DNA of 63,537 bases, counting the filler, from Octopus bimaculoides (lineage: Eukaryota): the NCBI RefSeq assembly GCF_001194135.2. It is 9 parts of 7 records of this genome, joined end to end, with 100 filler letters (N's around TTAATTAATTAA, not from the genome) between each part and the next. Parts side by side here need not be neighbours in the genome. Positions count along the whole stretch, not along the records: positions 28,678 to 44,045 come from NC_068982.1; 8 more parts are not named here. One strand, written 5' to 3'. How positions within the stretch are numbered: the first letter of the stretch is position 1; each line of letters starts with the position of its first letter. Shown piece after piece: positions 28,678-42,795 of this stretch. The position numbers and the translations under genes are program-made. A model generated the notes under the pieces. That model was not told the DNA's origin. It saw only the letters and a list, made by a program, of their open reading frames with translations, and made no database searches.

Positions 28678-28739
<62 letters not shown>

Positions 28740-28899
28740 GTGTATATAGTAAATAAAAAAAGACGGAGAAAAAAAAACAAGAAACGTTTGTGCATATATA
28801 GCAGCAGCAGAGTATGAATCAAGGCATGAAAGAGTTAGCCAATATCTAATAAGTCGGCATTATAATATCAAAACTGTCGACAAAATGTAAAAGTTTCAG

Positions 28900-29185
28900 C
28901 GTGACGTTATAATTAAGAGGAAAAGTGCAACGGTTCTTACGGACTTTTCCATATATTCAGATTGAACCATCAAAACTAATAAACAGCATAATGATGTTCG
29001 CAGACCCGAAAATAAAGTCTGTATTATTAGTCGACGTGAAAATACCTTATGATCATAATATCTCGGTGAAAGAATTTGATAAATTCAGAAAATATAAACA
29101 TTTGCTCATTGAACTCGAAAAAAATATTGCATTCCAAAGAAAATACCATGTTAGTTTTACTAAATTATATTCAATTAAATTATAG
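28900..29185 (+). mobile_element. Fragment of a restriction-like endonuclease domain of a non-LTR retrotransposon
   Basis: LLVDVKIPYDHNISVKEFDKFRKYKHLLIELEK matches the D..(I/V)P.D.N...KE..K..KY..L..E motif. Confidence 0.7.
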
Positions 29186-29699
29186 AAAATGTTGATGCCA
29201 TCTGTGTCACCGTCACATTATAGATGAGCCGTCATTATTTGAGAAGTAGAGATCTAGAACAAAATTAAACCTTGTTATGTTGAGCAGATTTACTCCATGG
29301 ATAGCATTTTTGTGAAGTCAGGCAGGGACTCTGCTAGTTTTTTCTCATATAACGACATGCCTACGAGAAGGCAGACCTCAAGCCACACTTGACATTAGAG
29401 AGTTTGAAGTCTCCTAGAGAAAATATTTTAATGCTGTCATGTGCTCTACTTTCCTTTAATGATTATTTTTCTATATATCTTCATTCCATTTTGTAAAGGA
29501 GCAAACTAGTATATTTATTTTAATGACGTATCAGTAAGCTTCTTAGCCCTAGGTGTCGGGAAGACACTCGGCAATAAATTGAAGCAAGACTGAAAGAAGA
29601 AAATCTAATAATAATAATTATTACTATTATAATTATTACAGACCCTGGCACTTGGTGGTACTTTATGAACCCTGAAAAGATAAATGTCAAATGTGATCT

Positions 29700-30130
29700 C
29701 CAAAAGACTTGAGCTCCAAACATGCAAAGCTATTTGGAGAAGACGTGGACTTTTTCTGCATTAAATCGCATGTTGTTTTCTTCGGTCCATTTAAAGTGCC
29801 ACCTCGGTCTTTCAATAGGATCCGTGACTACTTGGGCTACTTTTGTATCATCGTCGTTGCTAATAAGAGTGACTGACTGTATAACTGAAGCACTTCACTC
29901 GAAACTAATGTATCTTCTTTAGAGGCCTCATTGATTACCGAGGCCTAGCTTGTAGGTGTTAAGAAGTTATGTACTCCTTCTCTACGCTTGCCGACTATGC
30001 CGAGTCCTCATAGCTTGTGACATATCATCCCGTGATCAACATTATCAAAGGGTTTGCAAGATCGACATCCAGGCATAATGCTGTAAAAGTTGAGTACAGT
30101 AACATATTCCTGAACGGAAGTCAAGCAGGC
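29700..30130 (-). mobile_element. Decayed CR1/L2-type reverse transcriptase
   Basis: DLA(N/K)PFDNVDHGMICHKL*GLGIVGK...DDDTKVAQVV...WTEENNMRFNAEK matches DFAKAFD.VDH...ADDTK...W...N.M.FN..K. Confidence 0.7.
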
Positions 30131-31999
30131 TGTTAGAGAGCAGATTTATGCTTTTCTCTCAGTTGACATTCTCTCAGGAAAAATCTTAATTCATATGCCT
30201 GGCATTATTGTCGTAACATATTCAAACCTTGTTAAGTTGAGCAGATCTGCTCCACAAATAGCATATTTGTAAAGTCAGTCAGGGACTGTGCCAGTTTTGC
30301 TCATGTAATCACCTGCCTAAGAGGAGGCAGCCCTTAAGTCACTTGACATCAGAGATGTTGAAGTCTCTTAGAGAAAAAATTTTTGAGGCTCTCATTTATT
30401 TAGACTTCTTCCATCTTTTCCAGTCTCTCTTCGAATGTGTACCTAAGATTTGGTGTGTGTGTTAGGTGATATGTAGTACGTATTTCAATTGTCATCTGTT
30501 TACTGTGTGCCATCCGTATGTAACAAATTGAGTGTCAGAGGCTTGACATTTACCTGATTCAAATCAGGACATCTTGACAGTATTACATTTTCTAGGATGC
30601 ACAACTTCACAGGCATGACAATTTCCCAGATGTACATCGCAACTCCATCAGGAGTTCTTTCTCTCCTGTCAATTTAAAATACAACACATTTTGGTATGTG
30701 TGTCTCAGCATTTGTTCTATCAGCGGTCAACTGTGTTTCTGTTCAAGCCATGCATATTGCTTTATTAAATGTCTCTCAGGTATTGGGTTTTGTGCTGGTG
30801 GGATGATACCAAGTTCTTTGTATTCAACAGCAACATTGGTGTGACGTACAGGATGTCAGTAACAACCACTTGTCTGACATATGTAGTGGCATCAGGGGTT
30901 GCCATTCTGGATCTTTAACTGTTTATAGTGGTCTGGCGTGCTGGTCTGCTGGTGTGCAGTTTTTTTTGTTTTTTTGCAGTGTTGTTTAAGGTAACCAAGT
31001 CAGCTGACTTACAATCTCCTGCACCATATACTCAAAAGACCATTGTTCAGCTGCTTAGTTATGTCTACAGGTTGTTTGTCTGTGGAGAAGTGCGTGCTAC
31101 GGTCGAATATTTCCAAAGTGGAAGGAGTGTGTGCTGTGGCCTGGTTTTGTGCCCTGAGTGATCTTGATGGAAGTTGACTCCTCAGAATAATTAGGTAGTG
31201 GCAATCAGTCAAGTCATGCTATTGTTATAAGACATATGCTTACTCCACCAACTAATTTTAACAACAAAATCTAGGTATTTGTGAGCTATATCCAGAGGAA
31301 CAGATCTATGATATTCCAGGCATTTTGTCTGACTGTATTGGGATTACATTATCCAATATGATTTTATCCAATATTATTTTTTTTAATGAGAGAGAGCGTG
31401 ATTTGAGAAATTTGGTTGGTATTTCAAACAGATTCAGTTGTCTCCTAGTGGTAGTAGCATAGACTGGTTAAGGCTCCCTCATGGACTTGATAGGGATTTC
31501 GTTGTAGAGATTGCAGAGAAAAAGCAAAACAAAAGGCCCGAAACCAGATCAAACAAACAGTATGATTGTGATAGTTGGGATAATGATACTTATATAAAAG
31601 ATCATTTGTAATACTCGTTTGCTGCATTGAGTCTAACAATAACCGTTTCAACAATTTCAACCGCATCAGTCTTGTTTTACTCATCTTTAATATCTCTGCC
31701 AACTTACCATTATATCTTAGGTTTCTATTAATCCAGTCTACATATAATAGCTCTAACACCTCAGTAGCAATTGACTAAGAAAAAGCATGACGTTTCGCAG
31801 CTTTGATAAAATATCTACTTTTTTATAAGAACAGCAGTTATGAAACTGACAAATAATATCAGTTCACCACCACCACAACTGCACCCACCCACCAAAAATA
31901 TAGGTGGAATTTGGGGTCACACCAACATCCCGCCATGCGGTCCTTTATTAAGAAGAAACAATATTGATCATCCATATAATTCCATATAATTGCTGTTGC

Positions 32000-32215
32000 T
32001 AAGGCGGTGAGTTGGCAAAATCGATAGCACGCCGGAAAAATATTTAGCGGTTATTTGTCCGTCTTAACATTCTGAGTTCAAATTCCTCCAGGTCCACTTT
32101 GGCTTTCATCCTTTAGGGATAGATAAAATAGGTACTTGTTGAGTGCTGGGGTCGATGTAATTAACTTATCCACTCACCCAAAATTGCTGGTATTGTACCA
32201 GAATTAGAAACCAAT
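32000..32215 (+). mobile_element. SINE family A in the intron upstream of the CD225 exon
   Basis: aaggcggtgagttggcaaaatcg...gagttcaaattcc...ctggggtcgat. Confidence 0.75.
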
Positions 32216-32285
32216 ATATTTGCTGTCGTTGGGTTTTATTAGCGTGCTTTAAATATAAACTAACTCTTGTCTTTCTGTCTTCTAG

Positions 32286-32456
32286 GCAAACTCAATGGCC
32301 CTAATTGGAAATATAGCAGGTGCAAACGAAGCAAACGGCAGGGCAAAACAATTCGTCGGAATATCACTTGTTGCTGGTTGTGTTTTCATTGTGCTTTTAA
32401 TCATTATTCCCGTTATAATACAGGCTTCTGTAAAAGATAATTCAAATTCATATTAA
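32286..32456 (+). CDS. Terminal coding exon of a CD225/dispanin (IFITM/PRRT-like) small membrane protein
   Basis: Branch point CTAAC (32260-64), pyrimidine tract and AG (32284-85), then a phase-0 frame ANSMALIGNIAGANEANGRAKQFVGISLVAGCVFIVLLIIIPVIIQASVKDNSNSY*. This fits the second half of the CD225 domain (G-N/D-x-x-G-A...A-K, then a hydrophobic TM helix) at the usual intron position. AATAAA signals lie downstream (~32565, ~32843). Confidence 0.72.
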   Translation, partial: ANSMALIGNIAGANEANGRAKQFVGISLVAGCVFIVLLIIIPVIIQASVKDNSNSY

Positions 32457-33429
32457 ATGAATCATATTAAATGAAGTGTATTCTTTTTTTACATAGTACA
32501 TTAATTATAATCACACAAAAATACTCTCAGCTAGAAATTTTTAAATATGTTGAGAACTGCTTTCAATAAACGGGATATTTCATAACAAATGACATAAATT
32601 GAACAGTGACATATTTTGATCGGTGAATTCTGTGCTTCAGTCTGATGGCAAGAACCCGTAAAGAAGTAAAACTATGAGTATATAGAGATATTGCTGGACC
32701 ATTTTTACCATTCCTTCTCTCTAATTTTATCACTCACGAAAGCAAGAGGTGATGTTGCTGCATTTTGCTTTTATTTGAATCTTCTTTTTCATTATGTCAA
32801 GGACTATTATAATTGAGAATAATTTTATAAGCGCAATTGTTAAATAAAGCAAACTTTTAAACTCTTGCCTAGTTTTTCAAAGTGTTAGCTCAAGTTATTC
32901 ATTTGATGGTTTAGCGCATATATATGAGCGCTTAACTCGGTTTAACATAAATTAGACACTGGATACACAAAAAGATAAACTGTTATACACATACATTCAC
33001 AAATATCGCTATACATGTCAACACAATATTTTAGATAATATTAGTTATAGGTGGCTAAAACTAAAATCTACATACAATAATAGACCACAGATGTAGAGTA
33101 ATATTTGTTTTAGCTTTCATTCATAAATATTTGGGTTAATATTGGTTAAAAATCTTTCTTGGTATCATGTCAAACAATGGAAAATGGAGATCACAATAAA
33201 TACACGAATGGAATTTTGTGGACAAGAAAGTAAATCTCCAGCGCAGCAAAGCTGTAAGAACAGCAGGGAAAGAATGGGTATCTACCCTTATAAAACGGAA
33301 AAGAAAATCTTACCAACGGACAACTACTGCATTCGAATCCGCACTCGTCAGATACCGTCAACTAATGAATCCTATAACAAAATAATAGTTGTTTAATATT
33401 TGTAAATACACCAATAAAACAACTTGCAT

Positions 33430-33508
33430 ATTCCACGACGAGCAGCAGCAGCAGCAGTAGTAATAACAGCAATAACTACTGTTGCTGCTGCTACTACTAC
33501 TACTACTG

Positions 33509-33590
<82 letters not shown>

Positions 33591-33733
33591 CACTACTACT
33601 ACTACTACCACTACTACTACCACTACTACTACTATTACTACTACTACTACCACTACTACCACTACTACCACTACTACCACTACTACTACTACTACTACCA
33701 CCACTACTACTGCTACTACTACTACTACCACTA

Positions 33734-33831
<98 letters not shown>
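33430..33831. repeat. Long (CTA)n/(CCA)n trinucleotide microsatellite
   Basis: Directly visible; source of the poly-T/V/L/S pseudo-ORFs. Confidence 0.95.
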
Positions 33832-34695: not shown

Positions 34696-35619
34696 ATGCG
34701 TGAGTGGTTGTTTATGTGATTGCGTTCCAGCATGTGCGTGTGTATGCATCGTGGAGGCTTTCCAAATAGGCAAGCACCGGTGTTCACGTTAGACTGTGCG
34801 CGCGTGTTATTATCATAGCTGAAATGACCCTTTAAAAACATACATTTGTTCCAACACACGAGTCCATATCAAGGAATTTGCAAACCAAATACAAAAACGA
34901 AGTACATATATATATATATGCTTGTGTGTGTGTATGTGCGTAGATGTGTGGGTATGTATGTATGTATGCATGTATGTATGCATGTATGTATGCATGTATG
35001 TATGTATGTATGTATGTATGTATTTATGTATGTATGTATGTATGTATGTATGTATTTATGTATGTATGCATGTATGTATGCATGTATGTATGTATGTATG
35101 CATGTATGTATGTATTTATGTATGTATGTATGTATGTATGTATGTATGGGCAAATTCTCGCCGGACAAATTTTGCACAAAAAATATCAACTAAAAAATAT
35201 TTTGCACAATTTTTTTTGTATAAAGTTTCACTTTCCTAAAACATCTTTAATGTACATACATACATACGCACATACATAAGTACGTACATATACATGGACT
35301 GCTCTTTTGTGGATCACTTAAAACTTTATGCAAAAAATATGCATGAGATGAAAAAGAGCCTTCACCCCCTTGCAACATTCTCAATGGAAGTAAGGTTGGA
35401 GGTTGGTCAAGTTGTGAAAAGGGGGAAAATTATAAACCAGGCTCCATAAATGATCTGTTTGTTTCCCCAATATCTAACGAGGAATGTTACAGGTGGCTAG
35501 AGGTGGATGGAAACATTTCTTAAAATGGCACCTGTAACAAAACACGTAACACTAAAGTATGTTACAGCTGAATGAAGAAAAGAGGGACCTCAGAACACTC
35601 TGCATACAATAAATCGGTT

Positions 35620-36068
35620 GCTAACTGCCTAAATGCCAATATTGAAGAATTAGGCTTCTCAAAACCAGAAAGGAGAAGGCTAATTCGGAGACAACAGATC
35701 CACTCCATCACTGGAACTGTAAAAATCTGTAAAACTTTCCAGTTTATCATTTAAATATATATGAGCATGTCTAGATATACAAGTTTATGCATGAGAATAC
35801 ATACATAAAGCAAAACATACCAATCTGCACATATACATACATACATACATACATACATACATACATACATACATACATACATACATACATACAAACATAC
35901 ATACAAGCAAGAATATCTTGTTAATGTTGAAATTCCAATGAACGAGCCTTGAATTGAAGTCAGAAACAGGCACTTTCTCTCTGGCAAGAAATCTTGAAAT
36001 AAAACTGAACAATGACATACATACATACATACATACATACATACATACATACATACATACATACATAG
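35620..36068 (+). mobile_element. Third 3' end of the same RLE-type family
   Basis: NCLNANIEELGFSKPERRRLIRRQQIHSITGTVKICKTF, the same 3' UTR, AATAAA and an (ATAC)n tail. Confidence 0.75.
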
Positions 36069-36769
36069 ACATGAAGACAGCGCCGGCAACATCAGAGGTG
36101 CAGATGTAGAGGACCGCTTATAATCCTTTCGAACGCTGTCTTCTTAAATAATGCCGATTGCTCTAGCTTAGATCTGCAACTGAATAATTTCTCCAGTTAT
36201 AACCACTTGCCATTCTAGCATTATTCTGACCGGATTTTTAAACATATAACTTACACCACGTGGAAGTTGCTAGCAAGATCATGGTTTACTCTAACAACAA
36301 CAACATCCAAGAAAACAACACTACATTACCAGTTAGCTATCCAAGAAAACATAAGTATTTCTCTCATTTTACGTGAACTTTACATCAAAACCAAGACCTA
36401 AGTCAGTGTTATCAAAAAGTTCGTGATGAAGCGGTTAAAAATACTGGAACGAAGGTAACCACATCTTAAACGACTTTTCGACGAAACCTATTCAGCCACA
36501 AGCACTTTTTTTAAAAAACATTGCTGACTACCATGCCGAAATCTACCAAACGTTATCACTAAATTCGCATGCCTCTCCAAATTTATTTGAGTCAACAATG
36601 GCGTATGTGGAGTATATCCAACTTACGAACATCTTGAAACTACAACTCATACCAAATTTTTCTACTTTTTCGAAAATATCATTGAGCGACAGGTCATTCT
36701 CAACAATGTTGAAAATTATCGATGAAATCGCTGGAGAGTACATGGTAGAATGTGATATTAATTATTTGA

Positions 36770-37850: not shown

Positions 37851-38229
37851 TAAATCCTCTCCAACGGAGCCCAAGTAGCCCGAGTAGTCAAGGATCCTAT
37901 TGATGCTAATAATGATATTGCTCCGAAACATCCAGCTCCTATATCCAGATTATAAACTTTGGATATAGTACCTAAGTAGTAGGGCCCGTGTAAACTACAC
38001 AGAATGGAAAAATTAAGAGGATCTATTTAAGAAAGAATATTTTGCTTTTTTATAGCATTCATCGTTTAGCTTTCTTTTGATATTCTTGACTTTCGTCTGC
38101 ATTCATTTCTTCACGTCTCCATCGGTGTTGTCTTTTCCCCCTTTCATTATATATTGTTGTTGCTTTCTCACTCTTGCTCTATACCTGCATATCGTTACTC
38201 AGGCAGGTTGCAACCGTGTTTCATGTGAA

Positions 38230-39903: not shown

Positions 39904-40497
39904 TCATTCACTAGAAACGCTTTGAAACGTTTGTTTTTGAAAGTAGTAGTTTTCTGATTGCAGCCCACCCGTGAAATCCGGCTTTGTGCAGCTTCCGTCG
40001 AACAGTTTTTGTGGAAACTGGGTTCTCGAGGTGGTCATTAAGGTCAGCAGTAATCTTTGCAGATGTACTTTTGTGATCCTTTTTAACAATTTGTGCAAGA
40101 GTCCGACAGTCCCTATCTGAAAGTATTGGTTTTCTTCCGGAGCTTTGTTTCAACGAGGAAGTTTTTCCCTCTTTCTCATAGGGTGTCATTAATTTCGAGA
40201 CAGTACTTCTTGATACGCCAAACATTTCGGCTGTTTTCCTTACGCTAGCGCCTGTCATACGAGCACCAACAATTTGACTTCTTTGAAAGTCCGATAGATC
40301 TGTCATTTTAATGAATGTTGATTACCTTTTTCTGATGATATCTGAAAAGAAACAGCAATTTTAGCAAAGCATACTCAGCAACACTAACAATATTAAAAAA
40401 AAACGTAAAAATAAACAAGCTTTTGGCGGTTTCATAGATATTTTAAAATTATGATGCTATGATGCTAGATGTTTCCATTATTTTGTCCAACCCCTAT
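39904..40497 (-). mobile_element. Tc1-like transposon, 5' part (TIR plus transposase HTH region), truncated
   Basis: ORF 39911-40306 MTDLSDFQRSQIVGARMTGASVRKTAEMFGVSRSTVSK...GRKPILSDRD...VSTKTVRRKLHKAGFHG..A.RK.LL; TIR-like GGGGTTGGACAAAATAATGGAAACATC next to TA at ~40470-40497. Confidence 0.9.
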
Positions 40498-41327
40498 ATA
40501 TGAACCCTAAAATGAATGCAATTTCCAAAAGTAGTTACTTGCATTCAAATACCCTAACTGAACCTTGAAAATACATAACTCTGTGGAGTGCTCAGCCACT
40601 TACACGTTAATTTCATGAGCAGGCTGTTCCGTTGATCGGATCAACTGGAACCCTCGACGTCGTAAGCGATGGAGTGCCAATAATAATTCATGAACTGCTA
40701 TATGCTGCACGGATATTTTTTCATAAGTAAAACTGTTACACTCCTTAAAGCAACCTGCCCACATTTGTGACGTAACCTGTCACGCTGTTTATAAGGTTGC
40801 TGCTACCAGCTGTCATCACTAAATTCGCCTGCCTCTCCAAATTTGGTTCACAAACACGGCTGTGGAATATATCCAACTTAGAAACATCTTGAAACTACAG
40901 TTCACACGAATTTTTTCTACTTTTTTCGAAAATATCGTTGAGCGACAGGTCATTCCCAGCAATATTAAGAAAATAATGATACAGCTCTAATGTTGAGAAT
41001 TATCGATGATGTCGCTGGAGAGAGAGGATGATTCGCATTTTTATAGCATTTATTGTTTAGCTTTCTTCCTTTATTCTTGACGTTCGTCTGCATTCATTTC
41101 CTCACGTCTCCGTCGGTGTTGTCTTTTGTATCTTTTTACTACATCTTCTTGCTGTTGCTCTCTGATCCGTGCCCTATAACTACGTATCCTTTTAACCCTT
41201 ATAAACAAATATTTTTCTTAAGCGAGCAGACGATAAATAATTGAGATTGTCGCTATAAAAAAAATTAGCTCGATAAAAAGAAAAACTTTTCAATATCAAC
41301 TCACCACCACCGCTATCTGCCTCTTTC

Positions 41328-41438
<111 letters not shown>

Positions 41439-41782
41439 NNNNNNNNNNNNNNNNNNNNNNNNNNNNNNNNNNNNNNNNNNNNNNNNNNNNNNNNNNNNNN
41501 NNNNNNNNNNNNNNNNNNNNNNNNNNNNNNNNNNNNNNNNNNNNNNNNNNNNNNNNNNNNNNNNNNNNNNNNNNNNNNNNNNNNNNNNNNNNNNNNNNNN
41601 NNNNNNNNNNNNNNNNNNNNNNNNNNNNNNNNNNNNNNNNNNNNNNNNNNNNNNNNNNNNNNNNNNNNNNNNNNNNNNNNNNNNNNNNNNNNNNNNNNNN
41701 NNNNNNNNNNNNNNNNNNNNNNNNNNNNNNNNNNNNNNNNNNNNNNNNNNNNNNNNNNNNNNNNNNNNNNNNNNNNNNNNNN

Positions 41783-41834
<52 letters not shown>

Positions 41835-42795
41835 CACCTCTACCTCTCTCTCTAACTAATGTATATCGGGCGAACGAACATGCAGATTATTATACAGGTA
41901 ATAATTGGTGCACGTGGTTTTGTAATTGAATGCCTGTGATAATTTGGATAAGCTGAGGTTTACAGAAAAACAAATCAACCAAGTAACTACATCAAGGAAG
42001 AATTAAAGTAATAAAACCCAGCGGACAATTAAAGTAATAAAACATAGAGGAGAACATACTTACATACATGCATACATACATACGTACGTACATACATACA
42101 TACATACATACATACATACATACATACATACATAATTGGAGCGCTTGGGTTTGTAAGTAAATGCCTTACTGTCAGTTAGGATAAGATTGGATTTTCAGAA
42201 AAAGAAATCAACCAATTGATTCACCTTTATAAATACAATCTCTAAGCGGAACAGTAAAGCCAAGCAAGACTTTCCTCAGGTTCAAATTGTGACATAGTTT
42301 TCCTTATCTATTAACACATTCCAAAGATGGCAGTTTGTATCTTTATTAGAAACCAGCTTTTTCTTCAGCGGAAGAATTTAAATGATTAAAAACAGGAGAT
42401 ACATACATGCATATATACTTTCTTGGTCCTCCTGAAATACATGAACACCTATTTTCAAAAGTTCTTTTCAAAGAAAGATTCATAGGCATCATAAAGACAT
42501 GCATTTTGTTTGGCAATGAAATACTTGCTATCATTGTTTGAACCTGTGTAAGTACTATTTAGCATGATATGACGCCTACATAAATATATCATCAATGAAA
42601 GGGTTTCAATGAACAGATTATCCTTTCTCAGGATATGACTGTTTCAATACTGTTGTTCACATGCAAGCTGTTCATGAAGAATTATATGCTGAAAGGAAAT
42701 CTTTCATAAGGGAAATGTTACACTCCTTAACGTAATCTTCCCACGTTAGTAACGTAACCTGTGACGCCATTCAAATAATACTGCTAACACTACCC

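What the first reader, a model, noticed from the sequence alone, without database searches (positions are those of the whole stretch)
32260..32456. Hidden CD225/dispanin (IFITM-like) exon missed by the ORF track
This is a clean spliced terminal exon with the G-N-x-x-G-A...A-K signature and a TM helix. Dispanins include antiviral IFITMs and synaptic fusion regulators (PRRT2, SynDIG1), and I know of little characterisation of them in cephalopods. The family call rests on motif recognition in 56 aa.
Basis: partly seen in the sequence, partly recalled or inferred. Interest (0 to 1): 0.7.

Follow-up and report, generated by a model that had tools for sequence, protein, structure and literature searches.

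The report
Last exon of an octopus dispanin gene
This is very probably the final coding exon of a small membrane protein of the CD225/dispanin family (the family of IFITM, PRRT2 and TMEM233) in an octopus-like genome: a new but ordinary family member, with its first exon outside the available sequence and no evidence yet that it is expressed.

Summary
A very strong 3' splice site (CTAAC branch point, pyrimidine tract, AG at 32284-32285) opens a 56-codon frame at 32286-32453. A TAA stop and ATTAAA/AATAAA signals follow.

The peptide carries G-N-x-x-G-A-x6-A-K, a 24-residue hydrophobic helix and a 10-residue tail. Pfam CD225 matches only weakly (E=0.0015, 19.1 bits, below the 27.1 cut-off, second half of the profile only). 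A junk fragment scored better against another family, so this alone proves little.

The decisive test was independent. In five real CD225 genes that I mapped on their genomes, the loop intron is phase 0 and the next exon starts exactly 7 codons before the G of the G-D motif. The window's exon does the same. A family profile also ranks this exon 11 bits above all 852 other six-frame fragments of the piece.

Not shown:
- The first exon (CC helix) is not in the 3.6 kb upstream.
- No protein in the databases matches, although Octopus sinensis RefSeq proteins are present.
- There is no transcript evidence.
- Nothing supports an "IFITM-like antiviral" role.

Verdict: a genuine dispanin terminal exon, either live and unannotated or a recent relic. 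It is a new member of a known kind, of low to moderate interest.

The parts
32260..32264 (+). Branch-point-like CTAAC, 21-25 nt upstream of the acceptor AG
   Evidence: Read directly from the sequence. It fits the YTRAY branch consensus, which I cite from general knowledge. Its function is inferred.
32265..32285 (+). Pyrimidine tract (tcttgtctttctgtcttct) and acceptor AG at 32284-32285
   Evidence: Ranks 4th of 1849 AGs in the piece by a simple pyrimidine-tract log-odds score of my own. The AG is part of the TAG that closes the frame upstream, so the frame opens exactly at the splice site.
32286..32351 (+). Codons 1-22: C-terminal part of the cytoplasmic loop. G8-N9 stands in for the family's G-D motif. 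G8xxxG12 is at 32307-32321, A13-x6-A20 at 32322-32345, and R19/K21 are basic residues.
   Evidence: Translation. Aligned in register with a profile of real members. The motif definitions come from PMC3282796 and PMC7665892.
32352..32423 (+). Codons 23-46: transmembrane helix FVGISLVAGCVFIVLLIIIPVIIQ, with the conserved glycine (G31) and a proline (P42)
   Evidence: Hydropathy maximum 3.13 over 19 residues. It matches the end of Pfam CD225, profile positions up to 67 of 68.
32424..32456 (+). Codons 47-56 (ASVKDNSNSY), a short extracytoplasmic tail, and the TAA stop at 32454-32456
   Evidence: The family typically has a C-terminal tail under about 10 residues (PMC3282796).
32452..32570 (+). Candidate 3' UTR with polyadenylation-like hexamers: ATTAAA at 32452 and 32466, AATAAA at 32565
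   Evidence: Pattern scan. Usage is not shown. The two ATTAAA copies lie in a 14-nt tandem duplication at 32448-32475.

Best explanation
The segment 32286-32456 is the terminal coding exon of a gene for a small CD225/dispanin-family membrane protein in an octopod-like genome.

Proposed mechanism:
- The exon is spliced, in phase 0, to an upstream exon that lies beyond the 5' edge of the available piece.
- By analogy with the family, that upstream exon encodes a cytoplasmic N-terminus and the first hydrophobic segment with the C-C palmitoylation motif.
- This exon supplies the end of the cytoplasmic loop, the single membrane-spanning helix and a 10-residue outward tail.
- The loop carries a GxxxG motif, which drives oligomerisation in IFITM3 and PRRT2, and the A-x6-A motif.
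- The likely action is that of other dispanins: an oligomerising two-segment membrane protein that alters membrane properties and so modulates fusion or trafficking.

Shown: the reading frame, the motifs, the helix, the splice-site position and its identity with the family's, and the profile match.

Inferred: splicing in vivo, the existence of exon 1, expression, topology, oligomerisation and any cellular role.
For: Intron position:
- The loop intron is phase 0 and the downstream exon starts 7 codons before the G of G-D in five genes: Pan IFITM5, Ictalurus 'interferon induced protein 2', Alligator TMEM233 and Pseudopodoces PRRT1, and Lampetra TRARG1-like.
- Four of the five (all but the Lampetra gene, which I mapped by hand) fall in one alignment column.
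- The window's exon starts 7 codons before G-N in phase 0, at a top-0.2% acceptor.
- PMC3282796 states that this splice site is shared by nearly all eukaryotic dispanins.

Profile matches:
- Pfam CD225 E=0.0015, second half of the profile; shuffles gave nothing.
- A C-half HMM of 120 real members gave 18.2 bits and E=6.8e-5 over 853 fragments. The next best scored 7.0 bits. The alignment is in register.

Other features:
- The G-N variant exists in bona fide members, for example fish PRRT2 GNIDGA and monotreme IFITM5 GNMAAA.
- The frame is open (P about 0.02), the first codon position is G-rich and the third is A/T-rich.
- A stop and poly(A)-like signals follow.
Against: - No exon encoding the first half of the domain was found in the 3.6 kb upstream (Pfam on 57 fragments; N-half HMM best 7.0 bits, E=0.23).
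- No protein in 5.8 billion clusters or 1.84 billion representatives matches the exon, although Octopus sinensis RefSeq proteins are in that collection.
- The 53-aa ORF is not on record as a called gene.
- There is no match in metagenome contigs.
- The Pfam score is below the gathering cut-off (19.1 against 27.1).
- D of the G-D motif is N.
- There is no transcript or cross-species conservation evidence.
Confidence: 0.58

Rival explanations
1. It is a relic: the last exon of a dispanin gene that has died (lost or disrupted exon 1, or a silenced duplicate). It is still open and recognisable but no longer part of an expressed protein.
For: - Homology and splice position are as for the best explanation.
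- No first-half exon is present in 3.6 kb upstream.
- No annotated or predicted protein anywhere matches it, although O. sinensis RefSeq is in the collection.
- The most conserved acidic residue of the G-D motif is replaced.
- A SINE-like insertion sits 100 nt upstream of the acceptor.
Against: - The frame is intact over all 56 codons in AT-rich DNA (P about 0.02 by chance).
- The splice acceptor, branch point and most motif residues are intact.
- G-N occurs in functional family members.
- From general knowledge, cephalopod introns are commonly longer than 3.6 kb, so the absence of exon 1 in the piece says little.
- Small two-exon genes are often missed by annotation.
Confidence: 0.3
2. It is a chance open frame in AT-rich intergenic or intronic DNA that happens to resemble the second half of CD225.
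For: - The Pfam hit is weak. After allowing for the roughly 300-470 fragments a reader scans in this piece, its expected number is about 0.5.
- A spurious hit of E=1.3e-4 turned up among 57 neighbouring fragments.
- Hydrophobic stretches inflate such scores.
- There are no homologues in the large protein searches.
Against: - Chance would also have to place a top-0.2% acceptor at exactly the codon where the family's ancient phase-0 intron lies.
- It would have to keep the profile alignment in register from the first residues.
- It would have to end the frame 10 residues after the helix, as in the family.
- No other of 852 fragments comes within 11 bits, and shuffles score nothing.
Confidence: 0.09
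3. It is the transmembrane exon of another single-pass protein, for example a protocadherin. My recollection is that this family is greatly expanded in octopus.
For: The Pfam Protocadherin family PF08374 matches at E=0.0086, 16.6 bits, profile positions 20-70 of 217.
Against: - It scores lower than CD225.
- The match covers only the hydrophobic part of a 217-position profile.
- The frame stops 10 residues after the helix, where a protocadherin would continue into a long cytoplasmic domain.
- The loop motifs and the splice position are CD225-specific.
Confidence: 0.03

Closest known systems
CD225/dispanin family (Pfam PF04505) in general, as defined by Sallman Almen et al. 2012 (PMC3282796)
   Same: - Loop motifs: G-(D/N), A-x6-A and GxxxG.
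- Basic residues before the helix.
- A second transmembrane helix with a conserved glycine.
- A short C-terminal tail.
- A phase-0 intron in the loop at the identical codon position.
   Different: - Only the second half of the domain is present in the piece.
- D of G-D is N.
- The Pfam score is below the gathering cut-off.
- The first helix with the C-C motif has not been located.
PRRT2 / TMEM233 / TRARG1 (dispanin B) and PRRT1 (dispanin D) of vertebrates
   Same: These give the best pairwise alignments to the exon:
- 36.7% identity over 49 residues to a bird PRRT1.
- 45-48% over 29 residues to fish PRRT2, with the same GNIxGA start.
- Identical exon boundary.
   Different: - The sample of comparators was retrieved with a bait profile that contained the exon, so those pairwise E-values are biased.
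- Identity is low.
- No orthology can be claimed.
- The N-terminal proline-rich regions cannot be assessed.
IFITM proteins (dispanin A; IFITM3, IFITM5)
   Same: - The same exon boundary (IFITM5).
- A GxxxG motif, shown to drive oligomerisation in IFITM3 (PMC7665892).
- A LLIIIPV-type end of the helix, which resembles IFITM2/3 as far as I recall those sequences.
   Different: - PMC3282796 defines subfamilies A-D only for the vertebrate dispanins, and IFITMs are subfamily A.
- The IFITM-defining amphipathic helix and palmitoylated cysteines are encoded in exon 1, which is not available.
- Interferon induction has no known counterpart that was tested here.

Membership tests
CD225/dispanin (PF04505) | Pfam profile match at or above the gathering score (27.1 bits) | tested here: not met
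   19.1 bits, E=0.0015, profile positions 34-67 of 68 only. Only half of the domain is encoded here, so the cut-off cannot be reached by this exon alone.
CD225/dispanin (PF04505) | [quoted passage not shown] | tested here: met
   The exon begins 7 codons before the G of G-(D/N), in phase 0. Five mapped genes do the same, and the four mapped by then share one alignment column. The literature statement is in PMC3282796.
CD225/dispanin (PF04505) | G-D motif in the loop | tested here: inconclusive
   The exon has G8-N9. G-N occurs in real members retrieved here, namely fish PRRT2 (P0096, P0124, P0047) and monotreme IFITM5 (P0144, P0162). The canonical D is absent.
CD225/dispanin (PF04505) | A-x(6)-A motif in the loop | tested here: met
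   A13-NEANGR-A20, followed by K21. It is aligned to the profile's A...A-k.
CD225/dispanin (PF04505) | Second transmembrane helix with a conserved glycine, and a short C-terminus | tested here: met
   Helix F23-Q46 with hydropathy maximum 3.13. G31 aligns with the profile glycine. The tail is 10 residues, then a stop.
CD225/dispanin (PF04505) | First hydrophobic helix with a C-C (or C-F-C) motif and a flanking aspartate | tested here: inconclusive
   Not found in 28678-32285 by Pfam on 57 fragments or by an N-half HMM with --max (best 7.0 bits, E=0.23). The exon may lie beyond the edge of the piece.
IFITM subfamily (dispanin A) | IFITM-type exon 1 (amphipathic helix, palmitoylated cysteines) and phylogenetic placement within dispanin A | not testable with these tools
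   Exon 1 is absent from the piece. No cephalopod or mollusc dispanins could be retrieved for a tree, because the top 120 hits were all from vertebrates or unlabelled sources.
Protocadherin (PF08374) | Transmembrane segment followed by the conserved cytoplasmic region | tested here: not met
   Only profile positions 20-70 of 217 match, at 16.6 bits. The frame ends 10 residues after the helix.

The most novel reading that the evidence does not exclude
An expressed, so far unannotated cephalopod dispanin with a G-N loop variant. It might belong to a lineage-specific set of small membrane-fusion or trafficking regulators, acting in octopus neurons or in innate defence, that standard annotation has missed.
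Probability: 0.5. Interest if true: 0.35.

Novelty: new member of a known kind. Interest (0 to 1): 0.27.

Why it matters
Dispanins include antiviral IFITMs and the synaptic-release regulator PRRT2, and they are hardly studied in molluscs. My searches found no paper that holds both 'CD225' and 'cephalopod'. A confirmed octopus member would add one gene to the family's invertebrate catalogue, and it would show that short two-exon membrane-protein genes escape annotation in cephalopod genomes.

The finding has no unexpected architecture or mechanism. Its methodological interest is that a half-domain, sub-threshold profile hit was validated by an ancient conserved intron position.

Tried and rejected
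1. Word-indexed protein search with the 56-aa peptide: 1 candidate, none significant.
2. Exhaustive phmmer against 1.84 billion representatives: 0 hits at E<=0.001.
3. Exact look-up of the 53-aa ATG-started ORF: not on record.
4. Metagenome contig scan: 598 pattern matches, none confirmed.
5. Pfam on whole three-frame translations of 28678-32460: nothing. This approach was too insensitive, since even the exon was lost.
6. Candidate upstream mini-exon 30929-30990 (VWRAGLLVCSFFCFFAVLFK, AAG|GTAACC donor, phase-compatible with 32286). It adds only 0.3 bits to the CD225 score. Its acceptor is poor (rank 209 of 1849), it is not picked up by the N-half HMM, and it has no start codon. Rejected as unproven.
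7. 'ICCRWVLLACFKYK' just upstream of the acceptor (about 32215-32260): it is in another frame and would need an intron of about 40 nt. Rejected.
8. tblastn of the exon, and of human dispanins written from memory, against the piece: no tandem paralogue. One weak + strand similarity at 31352-31453 (E=0.068) was taken as chance.
9. A bait alignment (synthetic first-half variants joined to the exon, plus human sequences from memory) to pull out mollusc dispanins. It returned 449 hits, but the 120 listed are all from vertebrates or unlabelled sources. I used them only as real family members for profiles and gene structures. Pairwise E-values against that set are biased by the bait and are not used as evidence of significance.
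10. Self-comparison of the piece: the exon is not part of any repeat.
11. tRNA scan and Rfam: nothing.

Full report
**What is in the sequence**

On the + strand, 32260-32285 reads ctaactcttgtctttctgtcttctAG. This is a CTAAC branch-point-like pentamer, a 19-nt run that is almost all pyrimidine, and an AG.

The AG belongs to a TAG codon, so the reading frame opens exactly at 32286. It stays open for 56 codons: ANSMALIGNIAGANEANGRAKQFVGISLVAGCVFIVLLIIIPVIIQASVKDNSNSY. A TAA follows at 32454-32456.

- ATTAAA lies at 32452 and 32466, and AATAAA at 32565.
- By a simple pyrimidine-tract score of my own, the acceptor ranks 4th of 1849 AGs on both strands of the piece.
- The peptide has a 24-residue hydrophobic stretch, with a Kyte-Doolittle maximum of 3.13 over 19 residues.
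- At the local base composition, a 56-codon open frame has a probability of about 0.02.
- First codon positions are G-rich (21 of 56) and third positions are 75% A/T.

**How good is the family call on sequence alone?**

Pfam CD225 (PF04505) is the best family at E=0.0015 and 19.1 bits. That is below the gathering score of 27.1, and the match covers only profile positions 34-67 of 68, the second half of the domain.

The reversed peptide and six shuffles that keep the loop, helix and tail compositions gave no CD225 hit. Their best E-values, to unrelated families, were 0.07-0.23.

This E-value is not decisive on its own, for two reasons.
- The piece holds 295 stop-to-stop fragments of at least 30 residues and 470 of at least 20. 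A hit of this strength to some Pfam family is expected about once in two such pieces.
- Among only 57 neighbouring fragments, one reached E=1.3e-4 against an irrelevant zinc-ribbon family.

Large-scale searches gave nothing.
- The word-indexed search of 5.8 billion clusters found nothing significant.
- The exhaustive phmmer over 1.84 billion representatives found no hit at E<=0.001.
- The 53-aa ORF is not on record as a called gene.
- A metagenome scan confirmed nothing.

**The independent test: intron position**

I retrieved real family members. There were 449 hits and 120 were listed, all carrying PF04505. The bait alignment was partly synthetic, so I use these proteins only as authentic family sequences.

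I fetched the genomic loci of five of them and mapped their exons.

| Gene | Exon boundary |
|---|---|
| Pan paniscus IFITM5 | ...AYSIK \| ARDQKVVGD |
| Ictalurus 'interferon induced protein 2' | ...VFSRR \| THTANTIGD |
| Alligator TMEM233 | ...VYSVM \| ALNSYNQGD |
| Pseudopodoces PRRT1 | ...VKAVQ \| VRAAVARGD |
| Lampetra TRARG1-like | ...FSIM \| SRNSYAGGD |

In all five the intron is phase 0 and the downstream exon begins exactly 7 codons before the G of the G-D motif. In a MAFFT alignment of the 120 proteins, the four boundaries mapped by then fall in one column.

The window's exon reads ANSMALI-G-N. It has the same 7 codons, the same phase, and one of the strongest acceptors in the piece.

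Sallman Almen et al. [quoted passage not shown] It separates the two helices into different exons, is present even in a choanoflagellate, and is missing in only two of the genes they examined. A chance ORF has no reason to open at that codon behind such an acceptor.

**A profile test with a fair denominator**

I built an HMM from the 120 real proteins, using the columns downstream of the intron. I searched it with all filters off against all 853 six-frame fragments of at least 10 residues in the piece.

- The exon scores 18.2 bits (E=6.8e-5 for that set). The next best fragment scores 7.0 bits.
- The alignment runs in register: profile position 7 aligns to exon residue 7. It matches G-x-I-x-G-A, A-K, the helix glycine and the helix itself.

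The features listed by PMC3282796 for this half of the protein compare as follows.
- A-x6-A: present (A13...A20).
- A conserved glycine in the second helix: present (G31).
- Positive charges in the loop: present (R19, K21).
- A short C-terminus: present (10 residues).
- G-D: present as G-N. This variant occurs in genuine members retrieved here, such as fish PRRT2 GNIDGA/GNVDGA and monotreme IFITM5 GNMAAA/GNVAAA.
- G8xxxG12: intact. In IFITM3 (G91/G95) and PRRT2 (G305) this motif drives oligomerisation and is needed for function (PMC7665892).

**What is missing**

The first half of the domain should contain the aspartate-flanked first hydrophobic segment with the C-C motif. It should sit in an exon ending in phase 0.

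I did not find it between the edge of the piece (28678) and 32285.
- Pfam on 57 individual + strand fragments matched CD225 only for the exon itself.
- An HMM of the first half gave nothing above 7.0 bits (E=0.23).

A frame-compatible mini-ORF at 30929-30990 (…FFAVLFK|GTAACC) looked tempting. It adds only 0.3 bits, has a poor acceptor and has no start codon, so I do not count it.

From general knowledge, cephalopod introns are commonly longer than 3.6 kb, so this absence is uninformative about whether exon 1 exists. There is no tandem paralogue in the piece, and the exon is not part of a repeat.

**Organism and annotation status**

The piece shares two interspersed repeat families with Octopus sinensis.
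- A SINE-like element at 31998-32185 has at least four copies (77-84% identity) within one 20.8-kb O. sinensis locus.
- A Tc1-type transposase remnant at 39915-40501 is 82% identical to the copy in that locus.

This supports an octopod or closely related origin. It also shows that O. sinensis RefSeq proteins are in the searched collection. No protein there matches the exon, so the gene is either unannotated or not a live gene.

**Interpretation**

The most likely reading (about 0.58) is a genuine terminal exon of a live, unannotated dispanin gene whose first exon lies upstream of the piece.

A recently dead gene's last exon cannot be excluded (about 0.30). The evidence for homology is the same for both readings, and only transcripts or cross-species constraint can separate them. 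Chance (about 0.09) and another single-pass protein such as a protocadherin (about 0.03; PF08374 at 16.6 bits over the hydrophobic part only) are unlikely.

By analogy, the protein would be a small oligomerising membrane protein with one re-entrant or peripheral hydrophobic segment and one spanning helix, acting on membrane fusion or trafficking.

The IFITM-defining parts are encoded by exon 1, and PMC3282796 defines subfamilies A-D only for the vertebrate dispanins.

**Novelty and interest**

Dispanins are known throughout metazoans outside ecdysozoans (PMC3282796), and a Lottia member is reported in PMC7653359. This is therefore a new member of a known kind.

No paper in the searched library holds both 'CD225' and 'cephalopod'. 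The gene would be a small addition to a thinly studied corner of the family rather than a surprise.

Noticed in passing
window 31998-32185 (+): SINE-like interspersed repeat about 100 nt upstream of the acceptor. At least four copies at 77-84% identity lie within a single 20.8-kb Octopus sinensis locus (L006 17211-18309). No tRNA or Rfam family was detected in it.
   Followed up: partly
window 39911-40501 (- strand): Remnant of a Tc1/mariner-type transposase. A 131-aa ORF carries HTH_Tnp_Tc3_2-type domains. Its best protein hits reach 70-76% identity and include an O. sinensis 'uncharacterized protein'. It is 82% identical at DNA level to the O. sinensis copy in L006.
   Followed up: partly
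window 29264-29429 and 30220-30383 (+): Two direct copies (82% identity, about 165 nt) of an unidentified short interspersed element inside the presumed intron.
   Followed up: no
window 36543-36723 / 40803-40980 and 38041-38136 / 41032-41127: Two collinear pairs of similar segments (82% and 89% identity), which suggests two copies of a larger repeat. The second copy runs into CT-rich microsatellites and an assembly gap of 344 N at 41439-41782.
   Followed up: no
window 33491-33831: Long (CTA)n microsatellite of about 114 copies at 91% match. Many (GTAT)n/(ACAT)n arrays lie at 34952-35148, 35833-35905, 36015-36067 and 42054-42134. These create long spurious ORFs on both strands.
   Followed up: no
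window 32448-32475: Perfect 14-nt tandem duplication (TCATATTAAATGAA x2) spanning the stop codon of the exon. It duplicates an ATTAAA hexamer.
   Followed up: no
window 30929-30990 (+): Hydrophobic mini-ORF (VWRAGLLVCSFFCFFAVLFK) ending in AAG|GTAACC, in a phase compatible with the 32286 acceptor. It gets no profile support and has a weak acceptor, so it is probably coincidence. A very strong acceptor-like site also lies at 30978-30979.
   Followed up: yes
window 31352-31453 (+): Weak similarity to the exon peptide (32% identity over 34 residues; E=0.068 within the piece). It is either chance or a very decayed duplicate of the exon.
   Followed up: no
window 28678-32285, one + strand stop-to-stop fragment of at least 20 residues (not identified): Pfam hit Zn_ribbon_TiaS at E=1.3e-4. 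It is better than the CD225 E-value and almost certainly spurious, perhaps from a Cys-rich translation. It is a useful warning about E-values of about 1e-3 on translated junk.
   Followed up: no
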